Both the position numbers and the translations under genes were made by a program. Of a stretch of 64,000 nucleotides of DNA, positions 4,106 through 38,200 are shown one piece after another (positions within the stretch are counted from its first letter, which is position 1; the number at the start of each line of letters is the position of its first letter). This DNA is from Sminthopsis crassicaudata (lineage: Eukaryota). The stretch is from the NCBI RefSeq assembly GCF_048593235.1, contig NC_133619.1, positions 640,624,558 to 640,688,557 on the forward strand, read 5' to 3'. The notes beneath the pieces are model-generated. The model saw nothing but the letters and a program-made list of their open reading frames with translations. It was not told the origin of the DNA and searched no databases.

Positions 4106-4243
4106 GGGCGGGGCCAGCCAATCAGCCGCTAGCCCCTCTTATAATGGCCCCTAGCAACGGGGTATGAGCCCAGGCAAACGGGGAGAGACCCCGTGGGCGG
4201 GGAGAGTCTGAGGGGTGTGGGAAATTCCTCTGTGAATGTGAGT
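4106..4243 (+). promoter_or_regulatory. Putative IRGC promoter and non-coding first exon: GC box, CCAAT (NF-Y) box, RFX X-box-like site, splice donor
   Basis: GGGCGGGG 4106-4113, CCAATCAGC 4118-4126, CCCTAGCAAC 4149-4158, donor AAT|GTGAGT at 4238. Matching acceptor at 6530-6531 just before the IRGC ATG. IRGC is known to have a non-coding first exon and testis expression. Confidence 0.6.
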
Positions 4244-6538
4244 TGATTTGGGGGGAAATGGTACTCAATGTGGGTGAGATAGGGCAATTCCGAGGGAAGA
4301 AGGGAAGAGAAGTCCCGGGGACATAGACGCTAGGTCCAATTCTCCCGGTTGCCCTTTGGATCCCCGTAGTCTCGGCTACCCAGAACCCGTCACGCCGCGG
4401 GGGGGAGGAGGGAGCCCAGGGTTAGGTAGGAAGAGCTCAACCTCATTAAGTTCTCCAATAGACCCCGAAAACTTGGGAGAGGAGAGGTCTGGTCAGGGCC
4501 AAGAGGACGGAGTCCAATTCTCCGTCTCGATGGACCGGCTCGGCCTGCCCCTCGGTTCCTGGAGAAGAGAGACTGGAGCGGGTTTGAGGCACAGTCCATA
4601 TGGGCCCAATCGCCCGGGCTGAGCTCTCTTGCCTGTGCTAGCTGTCTCAGAGGTGCTAGGCCCGTTGTAAAAACGAGGGCAGGAGAAATCGGGGGGCTGT
4701 GGCCAAGTCCCGCTATAATCCCCACAGTTCCTTCTCCAGCTGTTACGATCTGTCCCTCCAATACCCCAGACCCGGCCCAGAAAAGAGAACTCCCCGGCGT
4801 GGGGAGTTTGAGCCCAATCCCCTCTATCAATTCAAATAGCCCATGGAGGGAAGTTTGGGGTGTGGGAAGGGTTTCCTGTGAGGTCCCCACTGAATACCCA
4901 GAGCTCTCTACGGAAGAGGCACTTTGTCCTGGGGCCCTCCGGACTGCTTATTGAAACACTCGGAACTGTGTTCGAGCGAGGCGGAGGGAGGTGGTGGCCA
5001 GGCCGGGGTGGGAGGGAACCAGTCTTAGCCCCTGCAGTATCTCAAATGAGTAGGGGTCCGGGTGAGTGGGAGAGGGGCAGAGAAACGAGACCGTGTGATT
5101 GTGTTGACTTCCTATGGACTGTGCTTGCTGCTTAGACGATTCTGGGCCCCCCATGCGCCAGAGGAGGGGAAGAGAGTTCTAAGTGTTGGAAGGAGGGGTT
5201 AGGGTCCCCTCCCTTCATTTCCATACTCAATCATACTCAAACCCCCCCCTCCAAAAAAAAAAAAAAACACAAACAAACAAAAACTCCAGAGCCATCCATA
5301 AGATTGGGAGAAGGAAGTGTCTCTGTGTCTGTTAGAGCTGGAGAGGAGGAAGGGGGTGTGCAGCTAATTCCCCAGCCTCTTTGTAGAGACTGACTGATAA
5401 ACTGTCACTCCTGGACCCCATGCTTACCGGGGAGAAACGAGTCTGAGTTCCCCACATTCTACTGTTCATATATCTCCTCTCACCTCAGACCTCCTGCTCT
5501 TCCATCTCCTGGGGACCCTGCCATAGTCCAGAAACAAAGGGAAAATGGAGGGGGTCCAGAAAGGGAGGAAGACACGGGGTGGGGAGATGCAATGGAACCT
5601 AGAGAGGAAGACACGGGGTGGGGAGATCCAATGGGTGGACTATCTCAGGGGATCATCCCTCCCTTTGGTAATAAAGGGGAAAATGGGAGTCAGAACCATG
5701 GGCTCCTAGGCCTCTCGGACAGGAAGGGACCTGTAGTCTGACCTCCAGTATTTTGCAGAGAAGGAAACTGAGGCCTAGAGTAGGAGAGATGATTAAAAGC
5801 TGGGACCCACAATCCTGGCATTGGCGCCATGTTGGGGTCGGACAAGCTGCCTTTCACGATTTAACCGTGAAAGGCTGTGGGCTTGACAGTAGCTCCCCCC
5901 TGAGTGGGAGTGTCCTTCCTCTCCTGTGGCCTCAGTTTCCCCTCCCTGTAGAAGCTGGTTCTCCGGCATGTGTTCTGCTTCTAGCGCCGGGCCCACCGAT
6001 TTGCTCTGAGAGTCCCTCCATTGCTTTCTTTACCTATGGGGAAAGTGGGAGGAGGATCCCTGCTTTCCTGCAAAGGGGGTAGGAAGCGGGCGTGGGATGA
6101 GGCTGGGGAAAGGCCCCCAGTGTAAGGAGGCTCCGGCTCGCTGGAACACACGGGAGCCTGTGGGGGCGGGCAGGGGGCCGGAGAAGGCAGAGACTAGGAG
6201 GAGAGAAGAGGGGAACAGAGGCCGCAAGCGGCCGAGTGGGAGCCGTTGTCAGGGACGGAGAGGGTCCGGTAGGAGAGCCGCCAGGCTGGCGCTTCCGAGG
6301 CTACCTCCGGCAGCGTAGCCTGGATAAGGGGGGGAAGGGGGCGGGCCGCCTTTACCGCTAACCGTGTCTGTGTCCGTGTCTGTGTCTGTCCGTGTCCGTG
6401 TCCGTGTGTGTGTCCGTCTCCGTGTCTCTCTCCTCGGCCCGCTCTCAGGGCCTAGGTGGTGTGAGCGGCCTGCCCCCTACCCCAAGGAGCACACGCATCG
6501 AGACTCCCCCACTCCCCCCCACTCTCCCCAGGGGCGCA

Positions 6539-7936
6539 ATGGCGTCCAAGTCACAAGCCCCCCCGACCGAGGAGGAGAGCACCATCCTCATGGCTAAGGA
6601 AGAGCTCGAAGCTCTCCGGACGGCCTTCGAGCTGGGGGATATCCCGAAGGCTGCCTCCCGCCTCCGGGAGCTTCTGGGCTCCGCCGAGAGTAGCCGCCTG
6701 GATGTGGGCGTGACCGGCGAGTCCGGGGCCGGCAAGTCTTCCTTGATCAACGCCCTTCGAGGGATCGGGGCCGAGGATCCCGGCGCGGCTCGGACTGGCG
6801 TCATCGAGACCACTACCCAGCCCACCCCCTACCCCCACCCCCAGCTGCCTGAGCTCATGCTGTGGGACCTGCCAGGGGCCGGCTCACCCGGCTGCCCAGC
6901 CGACAAGTACCTGAAGCAGGTAGACTTTGCTCGCTACAATTTCTTCCTCCTGGTCTCTCCCCGCCGCTGTGGGGCCGTGGAGACCCGGCTGGCGACCGAG
7001 ATCCTCCGTCAGGGCAAGAAATTCTACTTCATCCGCACCAAGGTGGACGAGGACCTGGCGGCTTCTCGCACCCAGCGCCCCTCGGGCTACAGCGAGAGCG
7101 CTGTCTTACAGGAGATCCGAGACCACTGCGCGGAGCGCCTGCGAGCCGCCGGCGTCCAGGACCCCCGGATCTTCCTCGTGTCCAACCTGTCGCCGGCGCG
7201 CTACGACTTCCCCCTGCTGGTGGCCACCTGGGAGCGGGAGCTGCCGGCCCACCGCCGCCACGCCGGCCTCCTGTCCCTGCCCGACATCTCCCTGCAGGCC
7301 CTGCAGAAGAAGAAGGATGCCCTGCAGGAGCAGGTGCTGAAGACCGCGCTGGTGTCCGGGGTCATCCAGGCCCTGCCCGTGCCCGGGCTGGCGGCCGCCT
7401 ACGACGACGCGCTGCTCATCCGCTCCCTGCGGGGCTACCACCGCAGCTTCGGCCTGGACGACGACTCCCTGGCCAGGCTGGCCGAGCAGGTGGGCAAGCA
7501 GGCCGGCGACCTGCGCTCCGTGATCCGCTCGCCGCTGGCCACCGAGGTGTCGCCCGAGGCGGTGCTGCGCATGTACGCCCAGTCATCGGACGGCGCCATG
7601 CGCGTGGCCCGGGCCTTCGAGAAGGGCATCCCCGTGTTCGGGACCCTGGTGGCCGGGGGCATCTCCTTCGGGACCGTCTACACCATGCTCCAGGGCTGCC
7701 TTAACGAGATGGCCGAGGACGCGCAGCGTGTCCGGATCAAAGCCCTGGAAGAGGAGGTCACCTCCCCTGGCTCCGACGCCCGCCTCGACGTCGCCAGCGG
7801 GCCCGGGTTGGAGAAGAGGGGGGCAGGCGAGGGCGGCGGGGAGGATCCTCCAATCTCAGCCCGCCGGAAGCTTGGACTGCTGCTCAAGTACATTCTGGAG
7901 AGCTGGAAAAAACGGGATGGGGTCGAAGACAAATAA
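6539..7936 (+). CDS. IRGC: Immunity-related GTPase cinema (interferon-inducible GTPase 5), 465 aa, single coding exon
   Basis: MASKSQAPPTEEESTILMAKEELEALRTAFELGDIP... closely matches human IRGC as I recall it, along the whole length. G1 GESGAGKS, G3 WDLPG and G4 RTKVD are intact; ends KLGLLLKYILESWKK. The ORF-track start at 6392 is an intronic GTG; the real ATG is 6539, after the acceptor at 6531. Confidence 0.97.
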   Translation: MASKSQAPPTEEESTILMAKEELEALRTAFELGDIPKAASRLRELLGSAESSRLDVGVTGESGAGKSSLINALRGIGAEDPGAARTGVIETTTQPTPYPHPQLPELMLWDLPGAGSPGCPADKYLKQVDFARYNFFLLVSPRRCGAVETRLATEILRQGKKFYFIRTKVDEDLAASRTQRPSGYSESAVLQEIRDHCAERLRAAGVQDPRIFLVSNLSPARYDFPLLVATWERELPAHRRHAGLLSLPDISLQALQKKKDALQEQVLKTALVSGVIQALPVPGLAAAYDDALLIRSLRGYHRSFGLDDDSLARLAEQVGKQAGDLRSVIRSPLATEVSPEAVLRMYAQSSDGAMRVARAFEKGIPVFGTLVAGGISFGTVYTMLQGCLNEMAEDAQRVRIKALEEEVTSPGSDARLDVASGPGLEKRGAGEGGGEDPPISARRKLGLLLKYILESWKKRDGVEDK

Positions 7937-8764: not shown

Positions 8765-8913
8765 CCAATCAGCATTCGTTTCTCAATACAATGGGCCCTA
8801 GCAACAGGTGTGGCCGAGAAGCCAACCGAGTCGGTGGGGATAAGATGCTCCGCGACTAGAAGAGGAAGCAGAAGAAGGGCCAGGGTCAAAGGAAGGCCCT
8901 GCTAAATGTGAGT
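8765..8913 (+). promoter_or_regulatory. Second CCAAT + X-box promoter module and putative non-coding first exon, probably of the downstream IRG paralogue
   Basis: CCAATCAGC 8765-8773, CCCTAGCAAC 8796-8805 (same 22-nt spacer as at 4118-4158), donor AAT|GTGAGTT at 8908. Candidate acceptors at 14091-14092 and 14099-14100, before ATG 14135. Confidence 0.55.
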
Positions 8914-9987: not shown

Positions 9988-11639
9988 TAGCTGGAACTTG
10001 AAGGAAGCCAGGAAGCAGAAGTGAGGAGAGCGGAGGACCAACCAGGAGGCCAGGGCCCGTCAACCGAAGGAAAGAGAGGAGGAGGCTCATCAGATGTAGA
10101 AATCAAACCAAGAGAAAGCAGACGAGGTGAAGGACAGGGAATGAGGCCTTAAGAGTCTTCCAGCTTTACAGCTTTATGGGATCCATTTAGAGCTAGCTTG
10201 TTTAGAAATCTCACTTTACAGATAAGGAAACTGAGGCTCAGAGGAAGGAAAGATCACATGGAGAGAGCCAGGGGATCCTAGAGCTACAGCGGGAAGGGAC
10301 ATTCAAGGCCATCTAGTCATATTTGCTCACTTTACAGATGAGGAAACTGAGACAGAGGGGAAGTAGTTTGTCTGGTCAGTTCAGGTGGCAAGCAGAGGAT
10401 TTGAATCCAGGACCATTGACAAACTTACCCCTTTTCCACTGTCTCCTGGTAGTACATGGATTACTATCCCTATTTTATGGAGGAAACTAGTCAGCCAAGG
10501 GAGGAAAAAGAATCGTTCAAGATTAACCACAGCTTGTGAAATTTGGAGGCAGGATAGGTGCCCTAGCATTCTCATCTCAAGCTTGGGATCCAGAGCAGCC
10601 AAATCTGGACCAACCTGCTTCCATCCAGGTGGACTTGAATCAGGAGAGGAAGAAAATAGTTAGTCCATCCGAGTTGGACGAGACCTTAGGGGCCGATTAG
10701 GGCCAACCCCTTTATTTTACAGAAGAAACCATTACTGAAAAAAGGCGGCAGGGAACTTGTCCAAGAAAATCCAAGACAGAAACTTGGAGCTCCAAACTCT
10801 TGTAAGGTCCCGTCTCTCCACCTGGGACTGGCCCCAGGAGCACTGGGGATCTAGGTGCCTCAAGACACTCTGGGTCTCAGTGCCTTGATGGGGGTTGGGT
10901 CAAAAGCTGGGCTCCCTGTCTCAGGCAGGCAGGGCTCCAGGGGTCAGGAAGTATTAATACTTCAGGCAAGTGGAATGAGCTGGCTGAGGTGAGAAGGTGG
11001 AGGAAGGCCCCGCTTGTTTTCTCTTCGAGCTCACTGGCCCTAGTTCCCAGAAGTCTTTCTCCCCAGGCACATCTAGGAAGCCCTCTGGAGAAGGGGACAC
11101 CATTTGCTGGGAGCTGGGATGTATGTGTGGGAAACCCCAGCTCTGGCCCTCTTCTGTGCCCTTGTCAAAGCACACACGACAGAGGGAGGGGCTCTCTTCT
11201 CACACTGGGGGCCATGATCAAGTGCATTTACACTTGGAACTCCCTGCTCTGACTCGACTACACACTCTCACTATTAGAAGTCAAGGGTAGATTATTAGAG
11301 AAACAGGCAATGTGGCAGAAGCCGATGGAGAACTTGCCTTGGAATCATATTCGAGTCCTGTGTTCCATATATGAGCAAGTTTCTGGAGCGGTTTTGCCCC
11401 AATGGAACAGTCCCCCAAATAAGGAAAGCTCTGCCCTCAGCATTATTTTGAACAGAATCTGAACTCACCCAGGTAGGAACTCCCAGTACTCGAAAGCAAT
11501 CTGCCCAAATCAATTTGCACCATTCTTCGGGAAAGAATAACCCGAGGGCGTTTGTCCAGGGTCACCCAGTGCTTCTCACACCATTTAAGTGTGAGTCAGG
11601 TGTTACAATGGATTTCCATCCTGACTGAGTACTTCAGTC

Positions 11640-14134: not shown

Positions 14135-15526
14135 ATGGCGGCCCCGACGACCCAGGAGTCTAAGACCACCCTGACTCTGAGCCCGGAGAAGATGGCGTCC
14201 ATCGGCGAGGTGTTCCAGGGAGACAGCCTGTCGGCGACCTCCACCAAGCTGCGCTCCACCCTGCAGTCCCTGGAGAACGTGCGGCTGGACATCGCCGTGA
14301 CGGGAGGGGCGGGCTCGGGCAGGTCCACCTTCGTCAACTCGCTGCGGGGCCTGGGCGACGAGGACCTGGGCTCGGCGCAGACCGCGCTGGGCGGGACCAC
14401 GTCGGTGCCCACGCCGTACCCGCACCCCCAGTACCCCAACGTCATCCTCTGGGAGCTGCCCGACGTGGGGGCCGCCTCCCTGCAAGCCGAGCAGTACCTC
14501 GAGAAGGTCCTGTCCAGCCGCTACGACCTCTTCATCCTGCTCAGCGCCGAGCGCTTCAGCCCCGGCCACGCGCGCCTCGCCCGCGCCCTCCAGGCCCGGG
14601 AGAAGCCCTTCTACCTGGTCCGCTCCAAGGTGGACGTGGACGTGGCCGCCTCCCGCCAGCGCAGACCCAGCACCTTCTCTGAGGAGGGCGTGCTCATGGA
14701 CATCCGCGAAAACTGCCGTTCCTACCTGCAAGGTGAGGGCCGGGGCGCCGGAGGGCCGGACGCGTGGGGCGGGGGGCTCGGGGAGCGACGGGAGGGGCCG
14801 GGGGCTCGGGGAGCGACGGGAGGGGCCGAGGGCTCGGGAAGCGACGGGAGGGGCCGGGGGCTGGGGAGCGAAGGGAGGGGCCGGGGGCTCGGGGAGCGAC
14901 GGGAGGGGCCGGGGGCTCGGGGAGCGACGGGAGGGGCTGGGGGCTCGGGGAGCGACGGGAGGGGCCGGGGGCTGGGGAGCGACGGGAGGGGCTGGGGGCT
15001 CGGGGAGCGACGGGAGGGGCCCGGCACGCAGGGAGCGACGGGAGGGGCCGGGGACACGTGAGGGCCCAGGGATCATGATCCCAAAGCTGGGGGCGGCAAC
15101 CCCCCAACCTCTGCCTTCCGTGGGCACTCCTGGAGCCAGGGGAGCGAGCCCACAAGCACTCGGGACTGAGGCGGACCGGGTAGAAACCGCGCTGCAGACT
15201 CAGTGACAGATGGGCATCTGGGCCGGACCTGGACCCTCTAGGGACAGGGAACTCACTCCCTTCGTACCCCTAATATCAAATGGGCCCCCAAAGGGTCCGA
15301 ACAGGGACTCCAGCGGCCTTCAGCCGACCCTCCTTTAAAGGTCTCGGAGCTCTCCCTGGGAAGGATGTCCATATCCTTAATATCACAGAATATGAAATCC
15401 CAAGCCTGGAAATCCCCTGGGGGCTTATCAGTTCGAGTCATACATGAACAATGTATGAGCAATACTTCTCCCTGCCCTCAACTTTAGGCAAGTCATTCTA
15501 TTTCTCTGGACTGCAATTTCCTCATC

Positions 15527-15560
<34 letters not shown>

Positions 15561-18500
15561 CATTGAATTAAGAAGCCCCTAAGGGACCCCCTCATGGAGA
15601 CCTTTACTCCTCCACTCCCAGAAAAACAACCTTGACAAATGATCAAGCCTTTGCTTGAAGACTCATGGTGACAGAGAGCCTATTGTTTCTTTTCTTTTCT
15701 TTTCTTTTTTTTTTTGGCTGAGGCACTTGGGGTTAAGTGACTTGCCCAGGGTCACACAGGAAGTGTTAAGTGTCTGAGGGCAGATTTGAACTCGGGTCCC
15801 CCTGACTTCAGGGCTGGTGCTCACCCACTGAGTCATCTAGCTTTCCTCAAGGGAGCCCCTTTCACTTTTAAAGATCTCTTGACAGGATCCATCTCTGTGT
15901 TGAACCCACTCTTTATGTCTTCCATTCACTGACTCAGCTACAGATGAGAGAAAGGAAAAAAAAAGTCTTCAAAGGATCATGGGTTCATCACTTTGAAACT
16001 GAAAGAAAGGGCCCTCAAAGTCCATCTAAACCAGTCTCCTCATTGTACAGATAGAGAAACTGAGGTCTCCACAGGGCAAGAGATCTCATCTCTTTACAGC
16101 TTATGTAAAACAGCCAACATTTACATGGTGCTTAAAGCAAGGCTCACAACACATTTTAGAAATATTATTTCAGGGCAGCTAGGTGGGGCAGTGGATGGAG
16201 CACCAGCCCCGAAGTCAGGGGGACCTGAGTTTTAATCTTGCCTCAGACACTTAACACTTCCTAGCTGTGTGACCTTGGGCAAGTCACTTCACCCCAATTG
16301 TTGCAGCAGAAAAAAATTTTTATTCTTATGACAATCCTGGGAAGAAGGTGCTGCTGTTATTCCCATGTTGGAGACGGGGTGGGGGATGGTAAATTTTCCC
16401 GGGCAATATTATATTTTCGGTGCGCTCTGATTATTATTAGAAAATGCTTCCTTATATCACTAGGAAGTGGCCCTGGGTTTGCACATTATGTCTCCCATGG
16501 AGCAGTGCGGATTCCATAGGACAGCTCATGAGCCCCCATCGGTGTGTTTATTTTGTAAAAGCAGCCGGGGAGGCGACGGCTCCAAAGCAAAGACATTTGA
16601 TGAAGTAACATAGTGAGGAAAGTCCCCATGGACCCGGATCAGTCTCCCACCAGTTGCATCTGCAGTCGGGGGGGGGGGGGAGAGAAGATGCACAGACAAT
16701 ATGAGTGAGGCTGAACCCAGGCTGTCAGGGGCATGGAGATGGATTACTCCTGTAGCTAGGCAACGTGTGGAGCAGGGTAGCAAAGATAAGATGCTTTGTT
16801 AGCCGCCGCTCGCTACTGGCCTCTTGTGGCTGACCCGTGGCCAGCACCGGCTGCTAATGGGTAGACAGGGCCCCGGGAATTGTGGGAGTTTCTCTCACTG
16901 TCCCATTTCTGGCCTCAGCTGGAATCCTTAGTCGGGGGAAGAACATTTTTTCTTCCTGGGAAAAGTAAGTAGATGTCCTGTGTGACCCTGGGCAAGTCAC
17001 TTAACCCCAGTTGCCTCAGCAAAAATTAAAAAAAAAAAAAAAAAAAAGATGTCCTTGCATAAGACTTGCATAAACTCTTCTTGAGAAAAGCCCTTCCCAT
17101 TTCTCAGAATCTTCTGAGATTGTTCAACTGTGGTCATGCTGCCTGGGCCACACACGTAGGGTTCCTCCGAGTCAACTCTCTGTCCTCAGGCTTATCTCTG
17201 TTGAGTTTTTTTAATTTAGTGATCACTGAATCCTGTATCTCTGTTCCTTCATGTTTCGGGTCAGCAAATCCCACGTAAACTGTATTTCAGCCAACAATTG
17301 CTGTAGAAACTGACCCCCCCCACACTATTTACCAAGGCCTTTGGGGGTCTGGGGACACCATTCTGTCGGTTCCCAAAAAATATTCCCCTTCTCTTTGGAA
17401 GACGAGTGGATTTTCCGGTATTCCCGGTATTCCCGTGAGTTCCAAGCCTGAGTCCAAGCCTGCTGCTACAAGGCCGCCATATTGGACACAGCGCTCAGGC
17501 TCCAATCTAGTGATGGCTCAGTGAGGTCATGGGGGGGCAGTGAGGTCAGCAAGGTGGGGAGGGCCTCTCCGGCTGAAAGAAGAAACTGAGACGCAGAGAG
17601 GGTGGTCACTCACTGGGGCAGGCCTGAGAGGGGACTCCGGAGCCCTTCTCTCCCAAGCTTGTGGGTCCTCCCACAAATCCGTGGCTCTGAATTACAACAG
17701 GATCCCCAGAACGGAAATGCAAGAAGGGCACAGTCACTAGTGGAGATGGGGAAGGAGGAAGAGTCTGAGGGCAGAAAGGGCAAAGTGGGCCAAGCGTCTG
17801 GGCACCCGAGTCAGGCAGCAAAAGGGACCCTCAGCGCGGCCTAATGGTTCCTCCTGTGAAAAGGATTCTAGATGTGATCTGGAGAAACGTGGATGAGCAG
17901 GAGGAAGCACTAGCTACCCCAGTGGTTCAAGGATGGTCTGGTGGCTTCCCATTTTGACTTCTTTTTAACGAAGTACAGAGTTGTCAGTTTAGTAACTAGG
18001 AGTCTCCACACTGTAGCAGGAGAGCAAGTGTTCCATTTTTGTACCCTTTATATTTAAGTGCCCCGGGAAAAGCCCCCTTCACCCTGTCTTAGTTACAGCT
18101 CTGGTCAGAAGCCTTTACATGAGGGGGAAACAATTTGGAAAGGCCCCCTTCACCCTGCCTTAGTTACAGCTCTGGTCAGAAGCCTCGACAGGAAGGGGAA
18201 ACAACTTGCTAAGCAGCGCTGGGTTTTTATTTTTATTTTTTATTGTCCGGAGCTGGTTCAGACCTGGGGTTTCATCAGTGCAGGGAGTTTCCCGTGTGGA
18301 AACTTCCTCCGGAGAGACCAGTGGTTAGCTCCCCTTAATGCTCAGTCTGAGGGGGTTGCATGGGCCAGGTGGAAGCGGGAGAGCAGGTTCTGTTCTGTGC
18401 ACATCACTGCTTATGGACAAGGTGCTCTCGGTACAGCCAGGTGGGATGGAGGCCCCGCTTTCAGTGCCCGGAGACAGCTCCAGGGACAGAGAGAGTGTGA

Positions 18501-20034
18501 GATGGCAACGGCGAGGGCCGGAGAAAGTCCTCTGGGGACTGTGAGCAGGAGAGAAGTCGGAGCGCCCACTGTGGGCACGGGCATGGGGCCGGGGGAGAGC
18601 TCCACCAGGCAGGGGTTTGTGGACCATCAGGGGTGAGGAAGCGCTTAATTACCGAGGACAGAGGGTTGAATTTGAACTCGGGACTCTTAGCTTACAGAGC
18701 GAGAGTGATGGTTCTGTGTGCACCGGAGGGCAGAACCAGGAGCCGAAGGGGCAGAGAGGCGGATTTCAGCTGTATGCTGGGGGAAGGAGGGAGGACTCTG
18801 AGTCAGAGATCCTGGTTTCTAGGCCTTCTCTGCCTCGTGAATAAATCACAAATGTGAGGGGTCGTCGCCTCTGAGGTATTTTCTATTTTAAATCCAGGAT
18901 CCTGATAATAGCTCTCCTGATGTAGAATGTCTGTTCAGGTGGTGAGTTCCCCGCCATGGGAGGTATCCAAGGCGGGGGATCACTCATTCCCGGTTTTGGA
19001 GTTGTGTGCAGGTCAGGGCCTCCAAGATCCCTCCTGACTCCAGGACTTAGTGGTTCGGGAGAAGAAAAGCAGGTAGTGAGTGCCCCGTGCCAGCAGGTGG
19101 ATGGAGGCCCCGCTCAGGGATGAGTCCTCCTCCTCCCCTCTGAAGTTCCTGGCCAGGACTATGATTCTGGAACAGCGTTCCTGTCCCCCAGATTTGAGGA
19201 GTCCTGACTCTCAAATCGGGGTGCAGCAAGAGAGCACCTAGAGCATTCTGGGAGGCCTTCCGGGACAGGGGGCTGGAGGGCCCCCAAAGCTGGGCTTCCT
19301 GAGGGGGGGCTTTGGAGGTGCCCGAGCTCTGGCCCGAGGGCGCCCACAAGTCAGAGCCCGGGTACCTCGGCGCCCTGGGAGGGCCCAGGCAGACGCAGGG
19401 ACCCTTGTCTTCCTCAGCGGAGGGGGTCACCAAGCCCAAGGTCTTCCTGCTATCCACGTTCGCGCTGGACAGGTTTGACTTCCAGCTGCTCAGCGAGGTC
19501 ATAGTGAGGGACCTGGAGAGCTCCAAGCGCCACGCCTTCCTGCTGGCCCTGCCCAACGTGTCGGCCGCCATGCTGGACAAGAAGGCCGGCTCCATGCTCC
19601 AGCACATCTGGCTCGTGGCCACCGTGGCCTGCACCAACAACCCGCTGCCGGTGCCCGGGGTGCCCGAGGTGGCCTGCGACCTGGGCCTGCTCGTGCGGGC
19701 CCTGTCCGGCTACCGCCGCGGCCTGGGCCTGGAGGCGAGCAGCCTGCAACGGCTGGCCCAGCGCACCGGCGGCTCTCTGCAGGCCTTGCACAGCAGGGTG
19801 TGCGGCCCGCTGTGCGAGGCGAGCTCCCCGCAGGTGATCGACTTCCTGGGACGCGCCTGCGGGAGCACCGCGGCCACCTTCGCGCAGGAGCTGGCGTCCC
19901 TGCCCGTGCTGGGGGTCCTGGCCTCCTGCAGCTTCTCCTTCGCCACCGTCTACCAGATGCTCCGCGCCTACCTGGACAAGGCCACAGCGGAGGCCAAGAA
20001 AACCCTGAGCCAGGCCTTGCCCACGGGCCAGTGA
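14135..20034 (+). CDS. Second IRG-family (p47) GTPase paralogue, two coding exons, 404 aa, with degenerate catalytic motifs (G1 GGAGSGRS)
   Basis: Exon 14135-14732 (MAAPTTQESK...LDIAVTGGAGSGRSTFVNSLRGLGDED...PYPHPQYPNVILWELPDVG...RSKVDVD...IRENCRSYLQ) splices phase 1 (CAAG|gtgagg ... ttcctcag|CG) to exon 19418-20034 (AEGVTKPKVFLLS...RHAFLLALPNVS...PVPG...GLEASSLQRLA...SFSFATVYQML...). 598+617=1215 nt with no internal stop; colinear with the neighbouring IRGC. Confidence 0.9.
14771..15055. repeat. G-rich minisatellite (about 28 nt unit) just downstream of the IRG paralogue 5' splice site
   Basis: gggggctcggggagcgacgggaggggcc, about 10 copies. Confidence 0.9.
15697..15845 (-). mobile_element. 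WSINE1-like SINE
   Basis: Poly-T then ggctgaggcacttggggttaagtgacttgcccagggtcacac...tttgaactc...ctggtgctc. Confidence 0.8.
16171..16313 (+). mobile_element. WSINE1-like SINE
   Basis: gggcagctaggtggggcagtggatggagcaccagccccgaagtcagggggacctgagttt...gcaagtcacttcacccc; a further 3' partial copy at about 16975-17047. Confidence 0.8.
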
Positions 20035-32291: not shown

Positions 32292-35200
32292 TCACGCCAG
32301 CAGGCGGCTGTACTCAGCCAGCGCGGAGGACTTCTTGACCCCGTCCCAGATACGGGCGGCGTAGTGGAACCTAGGCCAAGGGGAGGATCGGTGTCAGTGA
32401 GTGGGCCGGAGGGAGTCATCAGAGAACTTCTGGGACTCTCTGAGACCTCCAGGACCTCACCAGAACCTCCGGGACCTCACTGAGACCCAAGAATCTCAGA
32501 CTGCTCAGGACCACCTCTGCTTTGAAATGGGCCCAGACCACCCCAGCTCACATGTCCTGGGGACTGAGCTTTGCCAAGGGTGGAAGGTGAGCTCCTTGTC
32601 CACCGGCCCCCCTTTCCTGTGCCCCCCTCCCCCCAGGGCCGTACCAGTTCTTCTCGGTGAGGATGGTGTGCGAGAGCTGCGGCCGGGCCATGGACATCAC
32701 CTGGCTCCGGAGTTTGGTCACTAAGGACTGGAAGCTGGGGTGGCCTCGGTAGCCCGGGAGAAGGGAAAAGAGCGGGCTGGAGCCCGGGCCTGGGGATTGA
32801 GGGATAGGGTGAGAACCTCGGCCTGGTGCCTTTGCCCTTCCCCTTGGGTGCCCGTCCCCTCCAGAGCAGCCCCATGCCCACCCCACACCCCTGGGGAGCC
32901 CCCCTCCTAGGCCCAAGGCCCTCTGGCTGGTACCTGCCCGGGGCAGGCTCTCGCTGTCCCCCTCGGTGTCCATGAAGGGCACCAGGAAGAGGTTCACTTC
33001 TGAGTCCAGGAAGTCGGGGGGCAGGCCCGGGAAGACGTTGCACTGCAGCATGGACAGGGTGCCTGATGAAGGGGAGAGGAGGCCGTGGTGAGAGCTAGGC
33101 GCATGAAGCGGCCTCGAGGTGGGTCCGAGGGCGGCCCCTTACCCTTGTAGCGCAGGTGGGAATGGGCCATCAGCTGGTCGATCACCAGGTGCATCTGCCG
33201 CAGCTTCTGGGGGCAGAAGTCCTCCCGCCGGGCCTTGTTCTGCAGGAAGACTGAGGGAGAGGGACAGGTGAGCCCGAGGCTGGGCAGGAGCAGCCCCTCC
33301 CCCCTCCTCCCCCCTGGAGCGGCACCTCACCCAGATGGGGGTAGTACTCCGTGCCTTCGTCCGAGCCGGAGGAGCTGCTGGCCTCGTGGCTGGGGGAGGG
33401 GGTAGAGGGCTTCACCATCTCAGCCGTCTGCAGAAACCTGGGCGGGGACACAGGGAGGCTCGCTGCCTTGCCTGTGGCCCTGCCAAGCAAGACCCGCCTG
33501 CAGGAAGCCCCCCCCAGTGTCTGTGGACTCCCCTTGCTCGGCCCAACCCCATTTTACAGAGGCTCTGGGTCTTCTTGGCCTCGAGCTCCTGCCTCTCTGC
33601 TGCTGCCTCCAAAGCTTAGGGAGCCACTTAGCCCTCAGGAGCACAGACAGAAGCACCCAAGTCAGAATTCGAATCCGGTACCTTAAGCCCAGGCCCGGGT
33701 CCCCCAACTGCTCACCGGTACAGACTGAGGTCAGTGAACCAGTCCTGCACCACGATGACCACGTGGCAGACGGTGAAGAGGAAGGCCGCGATCTGCAGGG
33801 ACTGGACAAGAGAGATGATGCTCAGGGGGGCCATGGCCCTGCCTTCTCCCCCCTCCCCCCCGCTTGACCCCCAACCTCTCACCTGCATCTCCACGTAGGT
33901 GTGGGGCAGGTTGTACTCGGGGGGCAGTTTGCGGTCATTGTTGATGAGGTGGTCCAGGATGGACGGGCTCAGGATGGGCTGAGGGGAGGAGGGAAGGAGC
34001 GTCAGGGCCGAGACGGGGAGAACCGCCAGCAGGTGAAGAGGACTTGGCGGCCCGAGCTGGGCACTGTGCTCGGCATACAGTGGGCGCTTAATGATGCCTT
34101 GGGTGCCGTTACTGCCCCCTGGTGGCCTGCAGAGGCCCGGCCCACCTGGGTGTCCAGGAAGACGATGCGCTCCTGGGTGATGAAGAAGTCAATGCCGCTG
34201 GTCTGGTTCCCCCCGCGCTCCTTCATCTCGGCGCTCTGGGCCCGGAACACGTAGGCTCTGTGGGGGCAGCACGGGTTCCCTCCCGTCAGACTCTGTGCCC
34301 CCTCCCTAGGGGCCAGGGAGGCCCTCGGGGGGGCCCGGCCCAGGGAAGCAGCCTCAGAAGCTGCTCCACATCTGAAACGGGGGTGACGGCACGTGTCTGC
34401 CGCGAAGGATCAAGGAGATGTGGGGGGAGCATGGCGTCAGCCTCCAGTGCCGTGGGGAAAAGCTGGGGGTGCTAGTGGACCCCCAGCTCCTGGTGAGCAC
34501 GGGCCTCCCTAGGCTCCTCCCCTGCTACTTCATGCAGACAATATGGGCCAGGGTTAGGGACCAGAACTTGGCTCTTCCTGACCCTGTCTGAGACACGGCC
34601 CAACGTGGAGCCAGGGCAGGGAGGCCTCTGGGAGGTGGCCGCCTCCCCTCCCCCTCCTCCTCCCCTCTCAGGGACTAACCACAGAGGGAGGTCTAGGCTC
34701 AGTTCTGGGCGGGCTCCGCCTCACACCTAGTCTCCTTTTACTGACTCAAGCAGCCTTTAACGCCTACTGTGTGCCCAACCCTGTGACTGGGCTGAGAAAC
34801 CTCAAACTTAGCTCATCCTGGCCTGTGACTAAACAGAGCTGGGGCCGCAGGAGGGCGGGGCACAGGGAAAGCCCCCCCAGAACCACAGGGCTCGGGATCA
34901 GGGCTGACTTCTTGGAGGAGGCCAGGCCTTTGCTGGCCCCCTGGGGTGAACACGCTGGTGTTTCACTTCCTGGAGCTTCCCCACAGCCCTGGAGCCAGGC
35001 CCCCAAGGGACATTTCACAACTGAGGGCCCCCGAGGCTCTGGCTGGGTGAGAGCCGTGACCCCGGATCGCCCGTGTGGGGAGGGGCAGGGGGTCTCCGTG
35101 ATGGGTGACGCAGTGGGGAGAGGGCCGGGTGTGGGGGCGGAGGAGGAGCTGGGCCCGGGCACCCGCCTCCCGCCTACCTCTGGTCCTCCTCGGGGGTGTT

Positions 35201-38200
35201 GGCCGACAGCAGGGACATGACCATTGACTTGCCCGTTCCTTGCAGACCCAGGACCCCGACCACCAGCACGTCCGTCTGATCCAGCAGGTACTGAGGAGAG
35301 CGCAGTGCAGGACGTCAGCCCCCCCCTCCGACTGCAGAGGCGCCGCTCGTCCCACCACAGGCGGGGTGCTGCTGGAAGAGCCACCTGGGCAGCCCCCCCA
35401 GCAGGTAGGTTCTCCCCCCCGTCCCACCCAGGTCCTGCTCCTAAAGGGGCTCACCTCGATGGCGCTGTCGCACCAGTTCATCTGGTCGTCCACCAGCTTG
35501 ATGCTGTGCTTCATGCGCTCGGGGGGCAGCAGCTTGGCCTGGCCCACCACGGCTGGGAAGGGAGAGAGAAGGGGGCCGCCTGTCACCCGGACCAGGGGCT
35601 GGTTCTGCCTTTCTGTATATCTGCACGGCTTGGCACAGTGCCGCACACAGCAGGCACCTAATAAATGCACACTGGCTGGCCAATAAAGGGGAGGCCGCGG
35701 CCCGAGGGAAGGCCGAGCCGAGTGCAGAGTGGGGCGGCCTTTGTTCCTCCCAGGGTGAGCCCACCTCCCCCCCCCTTTTCCCTTCTGAGGAAAACAGGCC
35801 CCAGTCCCTGGAGCGGTAAGCCTGGGCAGTGGCCGGGCAGGTGCCCTGGGGGGAGGGACTGCCCCCCAGCGACTCTGACTGCAGCACCCTCCCTCCCAGC
35901 CTCTCCCTTACCTGCGAGTGGGTCCCAGGGAGTCTCCCAGAAGGACGGGCCAGGATGAGTCCTCCCAGATCCCTCTTGCTGGCTGTTCCACATGCCCACT
36001 CGCCCCCTGCCCCTCTCCATCCTCCCCCCTGCCCCCCAATGGGCCAGCCAGCAGTGCCCAAGTCTCCCCCAGGACCTGGCAGGGCTCCGTTCTCTATAAA
36101 TGTCTACCTTGGTGGGTCTCACGCCAGGCACTGTCCTCCACGGAGCCCATGTTGAGGCAGGACCCCGGATGAGCCTCCCTGGCAGGACCCCCGGCCTCAC
36201 TGCAGAATCGTGCCCCCCCATTTCAGGATCTCCCTCCTTTGGGACCTACGGGTCTGTCTGCACTGAGTCCCTGGGGAGGACCCGGCCCGGGCCCAGAGGG
36301 CCACTTTTCACATTAAGGATGCGTCTCCCAGACAGGAGGTGATGGCACTGGGCGTGCGGTGGCCCGGCCTCTCCCCGGGTAATCTCGGCCATGCCATCGC
36401 ACGTCTGCGTGCAGATACGTCACACAAAGGGTCCTTCCTTCGCCTTTTATTGGAGGCAGAGGCCGGCCCTGAGCGTGTCCCCCTCCCCGTGCACACAGAA
36501 GTGCCCCAGGCTCCCTTGCTGTGCTGACTGGGGGCCCCACCCCCCATCCGAGCATCTGCCACAGGAACAGGCATGGTGGGGTGTGGAGGGCAACCTCCAG
36601 AGCCGCCTACTGACACATCGTGCACCTGCTCACCCCGCTTTGTTCCGAGCACCCCCTAGTCGCAGCACCGTCTCCGTGTGCCCCCCACTTACGGTCCAAG
36701 GCGGCGGGCGTCGTGGTGCCCATGCCCCGGTTCTGTATCTGGTAGACGGGCTGGGTGGGCCGCTGGCCTTCCTTCTCCCCCTTGGGGGGGGTGGGTACCA
36801 CTGGAGGGGGCGGCGTGGCCCCTTCAAGGGCCGGGGCTCCTGCCCCCCCGGCCGGGCCCTTGGCTTCCTCCCGAGGCTTCATCAGAACAATAGGTTTGTC
36901 CAGAGGAGCAGGGGCCTGGAGAGCAGTGGGAGCCGGCGTGGTCGGGGGCGGAAGTTTGGACTGAGGAGGAAAAAGAAGCTTCAATCCCTGCGGCCCCCCC
37001 AGAATACCCCGGGCCCCCCAAGGACTTGCCCACAGCCTTACCCGCTCTGCTGGAGGCTTGGAGAGAATGATGGGCGTTTTCTGGATGATTGACGTCCCTG
37101 CCTCCTCATTGCCATCCTGTGAAAGGGAAGGAAGGGCGCCAGAGATCAAGGGCCTGGGACGGCTCCCCAGTACTGCCGCACCCTGTCAAGACCCCACTCC
37201 AGCATCCATCCCTCTAGCTCTCCTCTATCCCATCACACCCCTTGAGCCATCCTCTCTCCCCGGCCAGAGAAGACTGATGTAGTGCAGGGTGTCCCCCCCC
37301 ACACACACACACACACTCCCAGAGGTCAAGGAGGGACGAGCCACCCCTTCCTCCTTGGAGGACTGTAATCAAATCACCTGGGGTGCTTTAATCCCCTCTC
37401 CTCAGGGGGATGGCAACGTCACGACTCCCCTCAGCGTGGGAAGCTGGAGGAGAGCCTGACTTCTGAATGCAGGCAGATCCCCTGACCTCCCCGACCCCCC
37501 TGCCCAGCCAAAAGTGGAGCCCGAAAAACCATAGGGAAACTCAATGCGAAACTGGAGGGAGCGACCCCCTCCAGCCCAGGAGTGCACAAGGGTCAGCCAG
37601 GAACCCAGGACATGGTGACTAAAGGTGTCGAGGGGCCGCCAGAGGCGGGGGCCTCAAGGGCGCACCCTGGGGATGCTCAGGCCCAGAGGCTCGTCCCAAG
37701 AGGTCCTGAAGGGCAGCGGTCCCTGGAGGCTTCGAGGGCCTAAAGTGGGCCTGAGCACGCACTAGAACTGAGGCCGGGGGGAGGCCCTGCAATCCCAAAG
37801 AGAGCAGGGGTCAGCGTCCTGCCAAGCGATGAGGCCCCAGAGCCTTCAGCATGAGCGAGCAGAGACTCTGAGGAAAATGGAACTTCCAGAGGCACGGTCG
37901 TCCAGAAAAACGGGCAAGGGTGAAAAACCAAAGCTCGGCAGGAAGAAGCGGGAGAAGACAAAGTCTGCAAGCTGGCCCGGACCCGGGACCCTGGCCAGCC
38001 AGGACGGCGCAGACCCGCCAGCGCCGGAAGGAGCGGGACGGAATCAAAGCAGCAGAGACTCAGGAAGCCAAGGGCTGATGCCCGGAACCCAGGTGGAAGA
38101 TCAGGGGGCCGGGGGCAGAGTTCAAGGGTCCCTGGGTGTGCCAACCATGCTCCCAAAGCAGCCAGACACCGACTCTCTAAGATCCTACGTGGAGGATGCC

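What the first reader, a model, noticed from the sequence alone, without database searches (positions are those of the whole stretch)
14135..20034. Intact IRG paralogue with a 'GRS' P-loop: candidate new pseudo-GTPase class next to IRGC
Seen, compared with the adjacent IRGC: G1 GESGAGKS becomes GGAGSGRS (Lys to Arg); switch I TGVIETT becomes TALGGTT (Glu lost, both Thr kept); G3 WDLPG becomes WELPD; G4 SKVD is intact. The 404-codon frame is nevertheless open and spliceable. Knowledge: IRGs divide into GKS effectors and GMS (IRGM) regulators. In mouse Irga6 the P-loop Lys, switch-I Glu106 and G3 Asp are needed for GTP hydrolysis, and switch-I Thr102/Thr108 are Toxoplasma ROP18 targets. Human has no IRG gene between IRGC and SMG9. 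Inference: a hydrolysis-dead IRG, independent of GMS, acting as a regulator of IRGC or as a decoy for parasite kinases. This is of interest because Australian marsupials are very susceptible to toxoplasmosis. Automated pipelines may label it only 'interferon-inducible GTPase 5-like'; I cannot check prior description.
Basis: partly seen in the sequence, partly recalled or inferred. Interest (0 to 1): 0.85.

Follow-up and report, generated by a model that had tools for sequence, protein, structure and literature searches.

The report
Dasyurid IRGC-neighbour GTPase with arginine P-loop
This is a real, conserved two-exon gene of the fat-tailed dunnart, the marsupial copy of an old, unnamed sister gene of the sperm GTPase IRGC. 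In the dunnart family alone it has swapped the otherwise invariant nucleotide-binding lysine for arginine, yet it is still kept by selection.

Summary
ATG 14135, exon 1 14135-14732, a GT-AG phase-1 intron, and exon 2 19418-20034 give an open 404-codon IRG protein with the motifs GSGRS, TALGGTT, WELPD and SKVD. It is identical to the RefSeq model XP_074163147.1, 'interferon-inducible GTPase 5-like', of Sminthopsis crassicaudata.

It is not a new class. It is the dunnart orthologue of an ancient gene lying between IRGC and SMG9, found in platypus, marsupials and laurasiatherian placentals. None was found in primates or rodents. In 31 other orthologues and homologues the P-loop Lys is invariant. 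Only the three dasyurids (dunnart, devil, antechinus) carry Arg, plus E-x-x-D in G3.

The gene is not decaying:
- Crown-dasyurid dN/dS is 0.08-0.31, and dN/dS = 1 is rejected.
- 45 of 46 invariant positions are kept.
- The splice sites and a CCAAT + X-box promoter module shared with IRGC are conserved.

The K>R change (AAG>AGG) arose on a dasyurid stem branch with a strong GC-biased burst: synonymous W>S 28 against S>W 1.

My best reading is a selectively maintained, probably hydrolysis-impaired IRGC-sister protein. The proposed roles as an IRGC regulator or a Toxoplasma-kinase decoy have no support. Splicing could not be checked with reads, and biochemistry is untested.

The parts
8765..8805 (+). 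Putative promoter module of the paralogue: a CCAAT box (CCAATCAG), 24 nt, then an RFX-type X-box half-site (CCTAGCAAC). The same module with the same spacing lies ahead of IRGC at 4118-4158.
   Evidence: 2 matches in the window against 0.08 expected; the module is conserved downstream of IRGC and upstream of the paralogue in devil, Dromiciops, cat and bat. Factor binding is inferred, not tested.
14135..14732 (+). Coding exon 1 (598 nt, ends in phase 1). It encodes the N-terminal helices and most of the G domain.
   Evidence: It has the same length in devil and antechinus.
14321..14323 (+). Codon AGG = Arg63, the P-loop position that is Lys in all 31 other orthologues and homologues compared. 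It corresponds to Irga6 K82.
   Evidence: AAG>AGG, a W>S change on the dasyurid stem.
14381..14401 (+). Switch I core TALGGTT (residues 83-89). Both Thr are kept. The catalytic Glu (Irga6 E106) is replaced by Gly87.
14450..14464 (+). G3 motif WELPD (residues 106-110) in place of WDLPG.
   Evidence: The D>E change is shared with bilby. The Gly is lost in all Australidelphian orthologues seen.
14624..14635 (+). G4 motif SKVD (residues 164-167), intact.
14733..19417 (+). Intron of 4685 nt, GT-AG, phase 1. It is orthologous in marsupials and placentals and absent in platypus and in IRGC.
   Evidence: the donor G|GTGAGG and the acceptor tract cttgtcttc(c/t)(t/g)cag are conserved in six therian species.
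14759..15053 (+). G-rich 28-bp minisatellite (about 10.6 copies) at the 5' end of the intron. It is present in all three dasyurids and absent from the Dromiciops intron.
19418..20034 (+). Coding exon 2 (617 nt including the TGA stop). [quoted passage not shown]
   Evidence: In RNA-labelled runs this exon's word share is 0.45-0.93, against 0.07-0.42 for the whole gene span.
6539..7936 (+). IRGC (465 aa, single coding exon), the upstream neighbour and sister paralogue.
32644..32808 (-). An exon of SMG9, the downstream neighbour. It fixes the synteny IRGC - paralogue - SMG9.

Best explanation
The locus is the fat-tailed dunnart orthologue of an ancient, unnamed sister gene of IRGC. That gene sits between IRGC and SMG9 in monotremes, marsupials and laurasiatherian placentals.

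It is a working protein-coding gene with two coding exons and a therian-wide intron. It carries an IRGC-type CCAAT + X-box promoter.

On the stem lineage of Dasyuridae the gene went through a burst of GC-biased substitution. The burst was probably biased gene conversion at a recombination-active, minisatellite-bearing spot. During it the P-loop Lys became Arg (AAG>AGG). The G3 Asp had already become Glu, a change shared with bilby. In dunnart and devil the catalytic switch-I Glu was later lost.

The guanine-specificity motif, the P-loop Ser, both switch-I Thr and the whole three-domain IRG fold are kept. The protein has stayed under purifying selection since.

The most likely working mode is an IRG-fold protein that may still bind nucleotide but hydrolyses GTP poorly or not at all. 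It would then act through its structure and its interactions rather than through a GTPase cycle. It is probably co-expressed with IRGC and not interferon-driven.

Shown: the gene model, orthology, synteny, the motif states across species, selection, the GC-biased burst and promoter conservation. Inferred: biased gene conversion as the cause, impaired hydrolysis, and expression together with IRGC.
For: Gene model and identity to the RefSeq protein.

Orthology and synteny: IRGC lies 7.5-8.5 kb upstream in devil, sugar glider, Dromiciops and antechinus. Cat and bat have the order IRGC - paralogue - 520-aa gene on the minus strand. Platypus has three tandem IRGs. In the tree the paralogue clade has support 100/98 and the IRGC clade 100/100, both inside a mammalian clade at 99/99.

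Intron: same site and phase in six therians, none in platypus.

Motifs: Lys is invariant in 31 other sequences and is Arg only in the three dasyurids. This is the only one of 46 invariant columns that changed.

Selection: NG86 dN/dS for dunnart-devil is 0.31. Codon-model omega for crown dasyurids is 0.08-0.26 under three frequency models, with omega = 1 rejected at p <= 1e-9. Omega is no higher than background: 0.10 against 0.13, p = 0.32. Stem omega from GC-conservative changes alone is about 0.24, p about 1e-5 against neutrality.

GC-biased burst: GC3 is 0.79 in Dromiciops and 0.95 in dasyurids. On the stem, synonymous changes run W>S 28 to S>W 1, against 6 to 11 in IRGC. The stem is 0.80 substitutions per codon, against 0.11 for IRGC. 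The G-rich minisatellite at the intron start is found only in dasyurids.

Local loss of constraint: the switch-I core has 13 extra residue types in 8 marsupials against 3 in 20 laurasiatherians (Fisher p = 0.0015). Four of the 36 sites that vary within dasyurids fall in these 7 residues, p = 0.003.

Fold: the AlphaFold model has pLDDT 83.8 and pTM 0.82, with TM 0.77-0.79 to full-length Irga6.

Literature: no substitution of Irga6 Glu106 allows activation of hydrolysis (PMC3042988). The G3 Asp coordinates Mg2+, and D125G is a loss-of-function allele in GM4951 (PMC12749288).

Promoter. No ISRE core upstream.

Exon-enriched presence in some RNA-labelled runs and absence in others of the same studies.
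Against: No biochemistry exists. Arg keeps the positive charge and Glu keeps the carboxylate. Antechinus still has the catalytic Glu. Residual GTPase activity cannot be excluded.

Splicing and tissue of expression were not seen directly. The read-laying run failed. Run kinds are only guessed as RNA. Four runs hold most of the intron too.

The promoter reading rests on motif matches. A CCAAT + X-box pair also resembles MHC-type modules.

My codon model is home-written and assumes stationary composition, which this gene violates. Omega values depend on the frequency model (0.08 to 0.31).

The parsimony polarisation of stem changes used only Dromiciops plus three distant outgroups.

Biased gene conversion is inferred from substitution patterns only.
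Confidence: 0.55

Rival explanations
1. It is still an ordinary, active GKS-type GTPase. Arg63 and Glu107 are conservative replacements that the enzyme tolerates, so nothing about its mechanism has changed.
For: Both replacements keep the charge. G4, the P-loop Ser, both switch-I Thr and 45 of 46 invariant positions are kept. Antechinus keeps the catalytic Glu. Constraint in crown dasyurids is as strong as in other lineages.
Against: The Lys is invariant in 31 other sequences spanning amphibians to mammals. This argues that Arg is not normally acceptable. The G3 Gly is also replaced. Dunnart and devil lack the Glu that is indispensable for activation in Irga6. The switch-I core varies among three close relatives but is nearly frozen in laurasiatherians. 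From general knowledge, Walker-A Lys to Arg commonly abolishes hydrolysis in P-loop NTPases.
Confidence: 0.2
2. One reading: a hydrolysis-dead immune IRG that regulates IRGC, or acts as a decoy for parasite kinases such as Toxoplasma ROP18.
For: Catalytic residues are changed while both switch-I Thr (Irga6 T102/T108) are kept. From general knowledge, decoy IRGs exist in mice (Irgb2-b1). The gene lies next to IRGC and shares its promoter module, so an interaction is conceivable.
Against: The Thr residues are conserved across the whole family, so keeping them is not specific. No ISRE core lies upstream. The sister gene IRGC is a testis gene, not an interferon gene (PMC1297648, PMC9232189). The change is as old as crown Dasyuridae and so predates any contact with T. 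gondii in Australia (general knowledge). Erosion of switch I and G3 is seen in all marsupial orders, including American ones.
Confidence: 0.08
3. It is a gene on its way out. The active site has already gone, and the open frame is a leftover that has not yet been hit by a disabling mutation.
For: Related copies look eroded or partial in sea lion, Weddell seal, walrus and whales. No orthologue was returned for koala, wombat, brushtail possum, Monodelphis, primates or rodents, so the gene is dispensable in many lineages. The dasyurid stem is long.
Against: The frame is an intact 404 codons, with conserved splice sites, in three species that split tens of millions of years ago. Omega = 1 is rejected under every model, both for the crown and for GC-conservative changes on the stem. 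The promoter module is conserved.
Confidence: 0.07

Closest known systems
IRGC (IIGP5, CINEMA), the testis-expressed IRG needed for sperm fibrous-sheath integrity (PMC9232189)
   Same: It is the immediate neighbour on the same strand. It is the sister clade within mammals. It has the same CCAAT + X-box module upstream, and no ISRE was found. It shares the Pfam IIGP fold.
   Different: Identity is only 36-43%. The paralogue has no C-terminal extension of about 60 residues. IRGC has a single coding exon, the paralogue two. IRGC is extremely constrained (dN/dS about 0.01-0.02), the paralogue about 10-fold less so. IRGC keeps GKS, the switch-I Glu and DLPG.
Irga6 (IIGP1) and other GKS effector IRGs (Irgb6, Irgb10, GM4951)
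   Same: Same three-domain fold, TM 0.77-0.79. The G domain aligns without gaps. G4, the P-loop Ser and both switch-I Thr are present.
   Different: Arg replaces K82, Gly replaces E106, and E-x-x-D replaces D-x-x-G. His sits at the D164 position, and several catalytic-interface residues differ across the whole clade. There is no sign of interferon elements.
IRGM (GMS) regulatory IRGs
   Same: Another IRG branch in which the P-loop Lys is replaced and catalytic-interface residues are altered (PMC3042988).
   Different: IRGM has Met, not Arg. It belongs to a different, deep clade. Here the change lies within a GKS orthologue group and is confined to one marsupial family.
IRGQ quasi-GTPases (PMC1297648)
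   Same: IRG-related proteins near the IRGC region with anomalous nucleotide-binding motifs. They are a precedent for non-catalytic IRG-fold proteins.
   Different: According to the paper, the G motifs of IRGQ are far more degenerate. No IRGQ sequence was compared here.
[quoted passage not shown] 2005, PMC1297648)
   Same: It is probably the carnivore orthologue of this gene. Cat, hyena, mustelid and seal orthologues exist, and in cat the gene lies between IRGC and SMG9.
   Different: It was never named or characterised. Carnivore copies have canonical GKS, apart from some pinnipeds. The dog sequence itself was not examined here.

Membership tests
IRG / p47 GTPase family (Pfam IIGP PF05049) | Significant match to the IIGP profile over the G domain and the helical domains | tested here: met
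   exon 1 scores E 4.7e-57 over profile positions 1-180, and exon 2 scores E 4.9e-18 over positions 186-374.
IRG / p47 GTPase family (Pfam IIGP PF05049) | Three-domain Irga6-like fold: N-terminal helices, a Ras-like G domain and a C-terminal helical domain | tested here: met
   the model has pLDDT 83.8 and TM 0.77-0.79 to 5FPH and 1TQ4 over about 400 columns. This is a prediction, not a solved structure.
GKS subfamily of IRGs | G1 motif GxxxxGKS with the P-loop Lys | tested here: not met
   GSGRS in dunnart, devil and antechinus. The orthologues of other orders are GKS.
GKS subfamily of IRGs | Catalytic switch-I Glu (Irga6 E106) and G3 DxxG | tested here: not met
   Gly87, and WELPD in G3. Antechinus keeps the Glu but not DxxG.
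GMS (IRGM) subfamily | G1 motif GxxxxGMS and placement in the IRGM clade | tested here: not met
   Arg, not Met. The tree places the gene with IRGC-related sequences. No IRGM sequence was included in the tree, so clade exclusion rests on the orthologue group being GKS.
IRGC orthologue group | Position in the IRGC clade, a single coding exon and a C-terminal extension | tested here: not met
   separate clades, each at 100% support; no extension, and two coding exons. The true IRGC is at 6539-7936.
IRGC-neighbour orthologue group (RefSeq 'interferon-inducible GTPase 5-like' between IRGC and SMG9) | Synteny IRGC - gene - SMG9, a shared phase-1 intron, and monophyly | tested here: met
Interferon-inducible IRG effectors | ISRE/GAS elements in the promoter and induction by interferon | tested here: inconclusive
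   no ISRE core between 7.9 and 14.1 kb. GAS sites were not scanned. The transcription start is only inferred, and induction was not testable.
PseudoGTPase (GTPase fold without catalysis) | Loss of GTP hydrolysis and/or nucleotide binding, shown biochemically | not testable with these tools
   Only the motif states are known. They predict impairment by analogy with Irga6 E106 mutants and GM4951 D125G.

The most novel reading that the evidence does not exclude
Dasyurids carry a naturally 'locked' IRG. This would be a selectively maintained IRGC-sister protein that has given up GTP hydrolysis (P-loop Arg, E-x-x-D G3, and loss of the catalytic Glu in some species). It would work as a nucleotide-bound or nucleotide-free structural partner, plausibly with IRGC in spermatids. 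The stepwise erosion of switch I and G3 across all marsupial orders would then show that this old IRG lineage has been moving to a non-catalytic function for some 80 million years or more.
Probability: 0.3. Interest if true: 0.55.

Novelty: new variant of a known kind. Interest (0 to 1): 0.42.

Why it matters
Work on the IRG family has centred on mouse GKS effectors, GMS regulators and IRGC. The syntenic sister gene of IRGC is present from platypus to bats and ungulates, but no orthologue was found here for human or mouse. It seems to have no name and no literature beyond one sentence about a partial dog sequence.

The dasyurid copies offer a natural experiment. An otherwise invariant Walker-A lysine was replaced and the gene was still kept for tens of millions of years. 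That makes two questions directly testable: whether this IRG lineage needs GTP hydrolysis at all, and whether biased gene conversion can push an active-site change to fixation.

It does not, on present evidence, bear on the susceptibility of marsupials to toxoplasmosis.

Tried and rejected
Only the indirect word-share comparison was possible.

2. A pseudogene split by an insertion. At first I mis-indexed the ruler by 10 bases and found the strong donor and acceptor out of frame. I also noted a possible target-site duplication (GGTGAGGG / GCGGAGGG). Recounting showed the sites are in frame. The intron is orthologous in placentals, so this idea was dropped.

3. A blastn search for a duplicated promoter block between the two upstream regions. 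It found only simple repeats and MIR-like SINE cores. The real shared element is the short CCAAT + X-box module, found by motif search.

4. Pfam on four short minus-strand exons gave nothing. The SMG9 identity came from the PDB sequence search.

5. The literature terms IRGC2, IRGC-like, IIGP5 and 'interferon-inducible GTPase 5-like' returned nothing on this mammalian gene.

6. DNA for sugar glider, Gracilinanus and bilby could not be fetched because the files were too large, and the wallaby protein is not on record. The codon analyses therefore rest on seven species.

7. The third homologue search and the representative-library search were not used. The devil query already reached 31% identity, so orthologues at about 55% would have been seen.
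Full report
**What is there.**
The window carries IRGC at 6539-7936 (+, 465 aa, single coding exon). Six kilobases downstream on the same strand lies a second IRG gene in two coding exons.
- ATG is at 14135. Exon 1 ends at 14732 with the donor CAAG|GTGAGG.
- The acceptor ...cttgtcttcctcag|CG opens exon 2 at 19418, and TGA ends it at 20034.
- The joined frame is 1215 nt, or 404 codons plus stop, with no internal stop.
- Both exons match Pfam IIGP, at E 4.7e-57 and 4.9e-18.
- They are 43% and 36% identical to the neighbouring IRGC.
- A gap-free alignment to Irga6 (offset +19) confirms R63 = K82, T83 = T102, G87 = E106, T89 = T108, E107 = D126 and D110 = G129.

Downstream on the minus strand lies SMG9: window 32644-32808 matches human SMG9 residues 443-495 at E 5e-27. 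A KCNN4-like pore sequence follows near 51.7 kb.

**Whose gene it is.**
The spliced protein is 404/404 identical to XP_074163147.1/XP_074163148.1, 'interferon-inducible GTPase 5-like' of Sminthopsis crassicaudata.

**It is an old gene, not a dasyurid invention.**
Homologue searches returned orthologues from many groups:
- Marsupials: devil and antechinus (93% identical), bilby, sugar glider, tammar wallaby, Dromiciops and Gracilinanus.
- Monotremes: platypus.
- Laurasiatherian placentals: bats, cat, hyena, mustelids, seals, pig, peccary, hippo, deer, cattle, whales, rhinoceros, mole and shrew.

No primate, rodent, afrotherian or xenarthran orthologue appeared, although the search reached down to 31% identity.

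Where DNA or gene tables could be fetched, the gene lies directly downstream of IRGC on the same strand (devil, sugar glider, Dromiciops, antechinus). In cat and bat it lies between IRGC and a 520-aa minus-strand gene, the size and place of SMG9. Platypus has three tandem IRGs there.

A maximum-likelihood tree puts all these sequences in one clade (support 100/98) with the platypus 418-aa gene at its base. That clade sits beside the IRGC clade (100/100, on a long stem) inside a mammalian clade (99/99). So IRGC and this gene are sister paralogues that duplicated before monotremes and therians split. This copy stayed closer to the reptile-like ancestor.

Bekpen et al. [quoted passage not shown] That is probably this gene. 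I found no other literature on it.

**The intron is genuine and ancient.**
In devil, antechinus, Dromiciops, cat and bat the annotated protein is reproduced only by a two-exon model. The intron sits at the same codon and phase. The donor G|GTGAGG and even the acceptor tract are conserved between marsupials and placentals. Platypus and IRGC are uninterrupted at that site. An early idea that the gene had been split by an insertion was therefore dropped.

**How special is the P-loop?**
I tabulated the motifs in 42 sequences.
- *Lys.* Excluding low-quality models, the Lys is invariant in 31 sequences from amphibians to mammals. It is Arg in exactly the three dasyurids. A sea lion copy also has Arg, but it also has a damaged G3.
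- *Invariant columns.* Of the 46 columns invariant in those 31 sequences, K63 is the only one changed in dasyurids.
- *G3.* The D>E change is shared with bilby. The Gly is replaced in every Australidelphian seen: Ser in sugar glider and wallaby, Asn in bilby, Asp in dasyurids, deleted in Dromiciops.
- *Switch-I Glu.* It is Gly in dunnart and devil, but Glu in antechinus and Gln in Dromiciops.
- *Switch-I core variability.* The core shows 13 extra residue types among 8 marsupials against 3 among 20 laurasiatherians (Fisher p = 0.0015 against the rest of the protein). Four of the 36 positions that vary among the three dasyurids fall in these seven residues (p = 0.003).

So erosion of the catalytic apparatus is marsupial-wide and stepwise. 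K>R is the last, dasyurid-specific step. This is a lineage-specific state inside a GKS orthologue group, not a new class.

**Decay or function?**
- NG86 dN/dS for dunnart-devil is 0.31 (38.8 synonymous and 36.2 non-synonymous differences), against 0.018 for IRGC.
- In my own GY94-type branch model on seven species, omega for crown dasyurids is 0.10 against 0.13 for the background (difference not significant, p = 0.32). Omega = 1 is rejected (2dlnL = 101.7).
- With the three dasyurids alone, omega is 0.26, 0.09 and 0.08 under equal, F3x4 and F61 codon frequencies. Omega = 1 is rejected each time (p <= 1e-9).
- The frame, the length (404 aa) and the splice sites are identical in three species.

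**How the change may have arisen.**
- The dasyurid stem branch is very long for this gene: 0.80 substitutions per codon, against 0.11 for IRGC on the same branch. At protein level it is 0.32 changes per site, followed by only 0.01-0.07 in the crown.
- Third-position GC rose from 0.79 (Dromiciops) to 0.95-0.96.
- Polarised stem changes are extremely GC-biased at synonymous sites: W>S 28 to S>W 1, against 6 to 11 for IRGC. Non-synonymous changes lean the same way, 32 to 17.
- K>R is AAG>AGG, itself a W>S change.
- All three dasyurids carry a G-rich 27-28-bp minisatellite that begins at or within about 30 bases of the intron's first base. Dromiciops has none.

I read this as an episode of biased gene conversion at a recombination-active spot. 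It may have carried a mildly harmful or neutral active-site change to fixation. This is inference from pattern only.

Using only GC-conservative changes, which such a bias does not affect, stem dN/dS is about 0.24 and differs from neutrality (p about 1e-5). The protein was therefore under constraint throughout the burst.

**What the protein probably does.**
The AlphaFold model is confident (pLDDT 83.8, pTM 0.82). It superposes on full-length Irga6, GM4951, Irgb6 and IRGB10 at TM 0.77-0.79 for Irga6. The whole fold is kept.

The residues for guanine recognition (SKVD), the P-loop Ser and both switch-I Thr are also kept. The Walker-A Lys, the G3 Asp and Gly, and (in two species) the catalytic Glu are replaced.
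- In Irga6 no substitution of Glu106 permits activation of hydrolysis, although several of them still oligomerise (PMC3042988).
- In GM4951 the G3 Asp coordinates Mg2+, and D125G is a loss-of-function allele in vivo (PMC12749288).
- From general knowledge, Walker-A Lys to Arg usually leaves some nucleotide binding but abolishes hydrolysis.

I therefore think the dasyurid protein is hydrolysis-impaired and works through its structure or its partners. This is inference, and a tolerated, still-active enzyme remains possible (about 0.2).

**Regulation.**
A CCAAT box followed 24 nt later by an X-box half-site (CCTAGCAAC) occurs twice in the window, against 0.08 matches expected. One copy is at 4118-4158 ahead of IRGC and the other at 8765-8805 ahead of this gene. 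A donor-like AATGTGAGT lies about 110 bases further on.

The same module lies between IRGC and the paralogue in devil, Dromiciops, cat and bat, and also ahead of IRGC in cat and bat. No ISRE core lies in the 6 kb upstream.

IRGC is testis-specific, not interferon-induced, and needed for the sperm fibrous sheath (PMC1297648; PMC9232189). A shared, conserved promoter module suggests co-expression. I could not test the tissue.

In RNA-labelled public runs, exon 2 words are held at 0.45-0.93 where the whole 5.9-kb span is held at 0.07-0.42. Sister runs of the same studies hold none. That fits a spliced, tissue-restricted transcript but does not prove it.

Nothing here points to regulation of IRGC or to a decoy for parasite kinases.
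- The conserved Thr residues are family-wide.
- The promoter looks IRGC-like rather than interferon-driven.
- The change is as old as crown Dasyuridae, while T. gondii reached Australia only recently (general knowledge).

**Verdict.**
The feature is a real, annotated but unstudied gene. Its dasyurid form is a new variant of a known kind. Interest is moderate, for two reasons. It is a natural Walker-A Lys>Arg replacement kept under selection. It also draws attention to an unnamed, ancient sister of IRGC for which no human or mouse orthologue was found.

Noticed in passing
window 4118-4158 and 8765-8805; L001 3080-3120; L002 2966-3006; L004 4267-4307 and 7894-7933; L005 3239-3276 and 6986-7025; L003 16744-16783: A CCAAT box, 24 nt, then an X-box half-site (CCTAGCAAC) stands ahead of both IRGC and its neighbour. 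It is conserved between marsupials and placentals. In platypus it was seen only ahead of the third (452-aa) IRG within the stretch fetched. The pair also resembles, in reverse orientation, the X-Y part of MHC-type promoter modules.
   Followed up: partly
window 14759-15053; L001 10599-10890; L007 10616-11040: A dasyurid-specific G-rich 27-28-bp minisatellite starts at or near the first base of the coding intron. Its unit contains GTGAG-like strings, so it offers many cryptic donors. The open frame of exon 1 runs on through it to 15061. Dromiciops has no such array.
   Followed up: partly
proteins P0029, P0055, P0060, P0065, P0086: Marine-mammal orthologues look eroded. Sea lion has GSGRS and WDLLG. 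Weddell seal has GSGKL. The walrus model is partial. The humpback model is 'low quality' with G4 HSKVG, and the fin whale model lacks G4. A preprint reports IRGC itself as pseudogenised in Cetacea. Possible joint decay of the two neighbours.
   Followed up: no
L003 3982-5427, 10001-11257, 18032-19390: Platypus has three tandem IRG genes next to the SMG9-sized gene: IRGC (481 aa), the orthologue of this gene (418 aa, no intron) and a very divergent 452-aa copy. The divergent copy branches separately inside the mammalian clade.
   Followed up: partly
window 6539-7936 versus 14135-20034: Synonymous divergence between dunnart and devil is 2.5 times higher in the paralogue (dS 0.133) than in IRGC 6 kb away (dS 0.054). 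GC3 rose in both genes in dasyurids, but more in the paralogue.
   Followed up: partly
window 37740-41098: A very long GC-rich (about 75%) tandem array gives open frames of 690-970 codons on both strands (Gly/Pro/Ser/Leu repeats). It lies inside or beside the SMG9 region. It is probably a minisatellite, not a gene.
   Followed up: no
window 5745-5790, 10210-10255, 10325-10360: MIR-like SINE cores (ACAGATGAGGAAACTGAGGC) account for the only blastn similarity between the two upstream regions.
   Followed up: yes
window 48.9-54.4 kb: Several runs of N interrupt the KCNN4 region.
   Followed up: no
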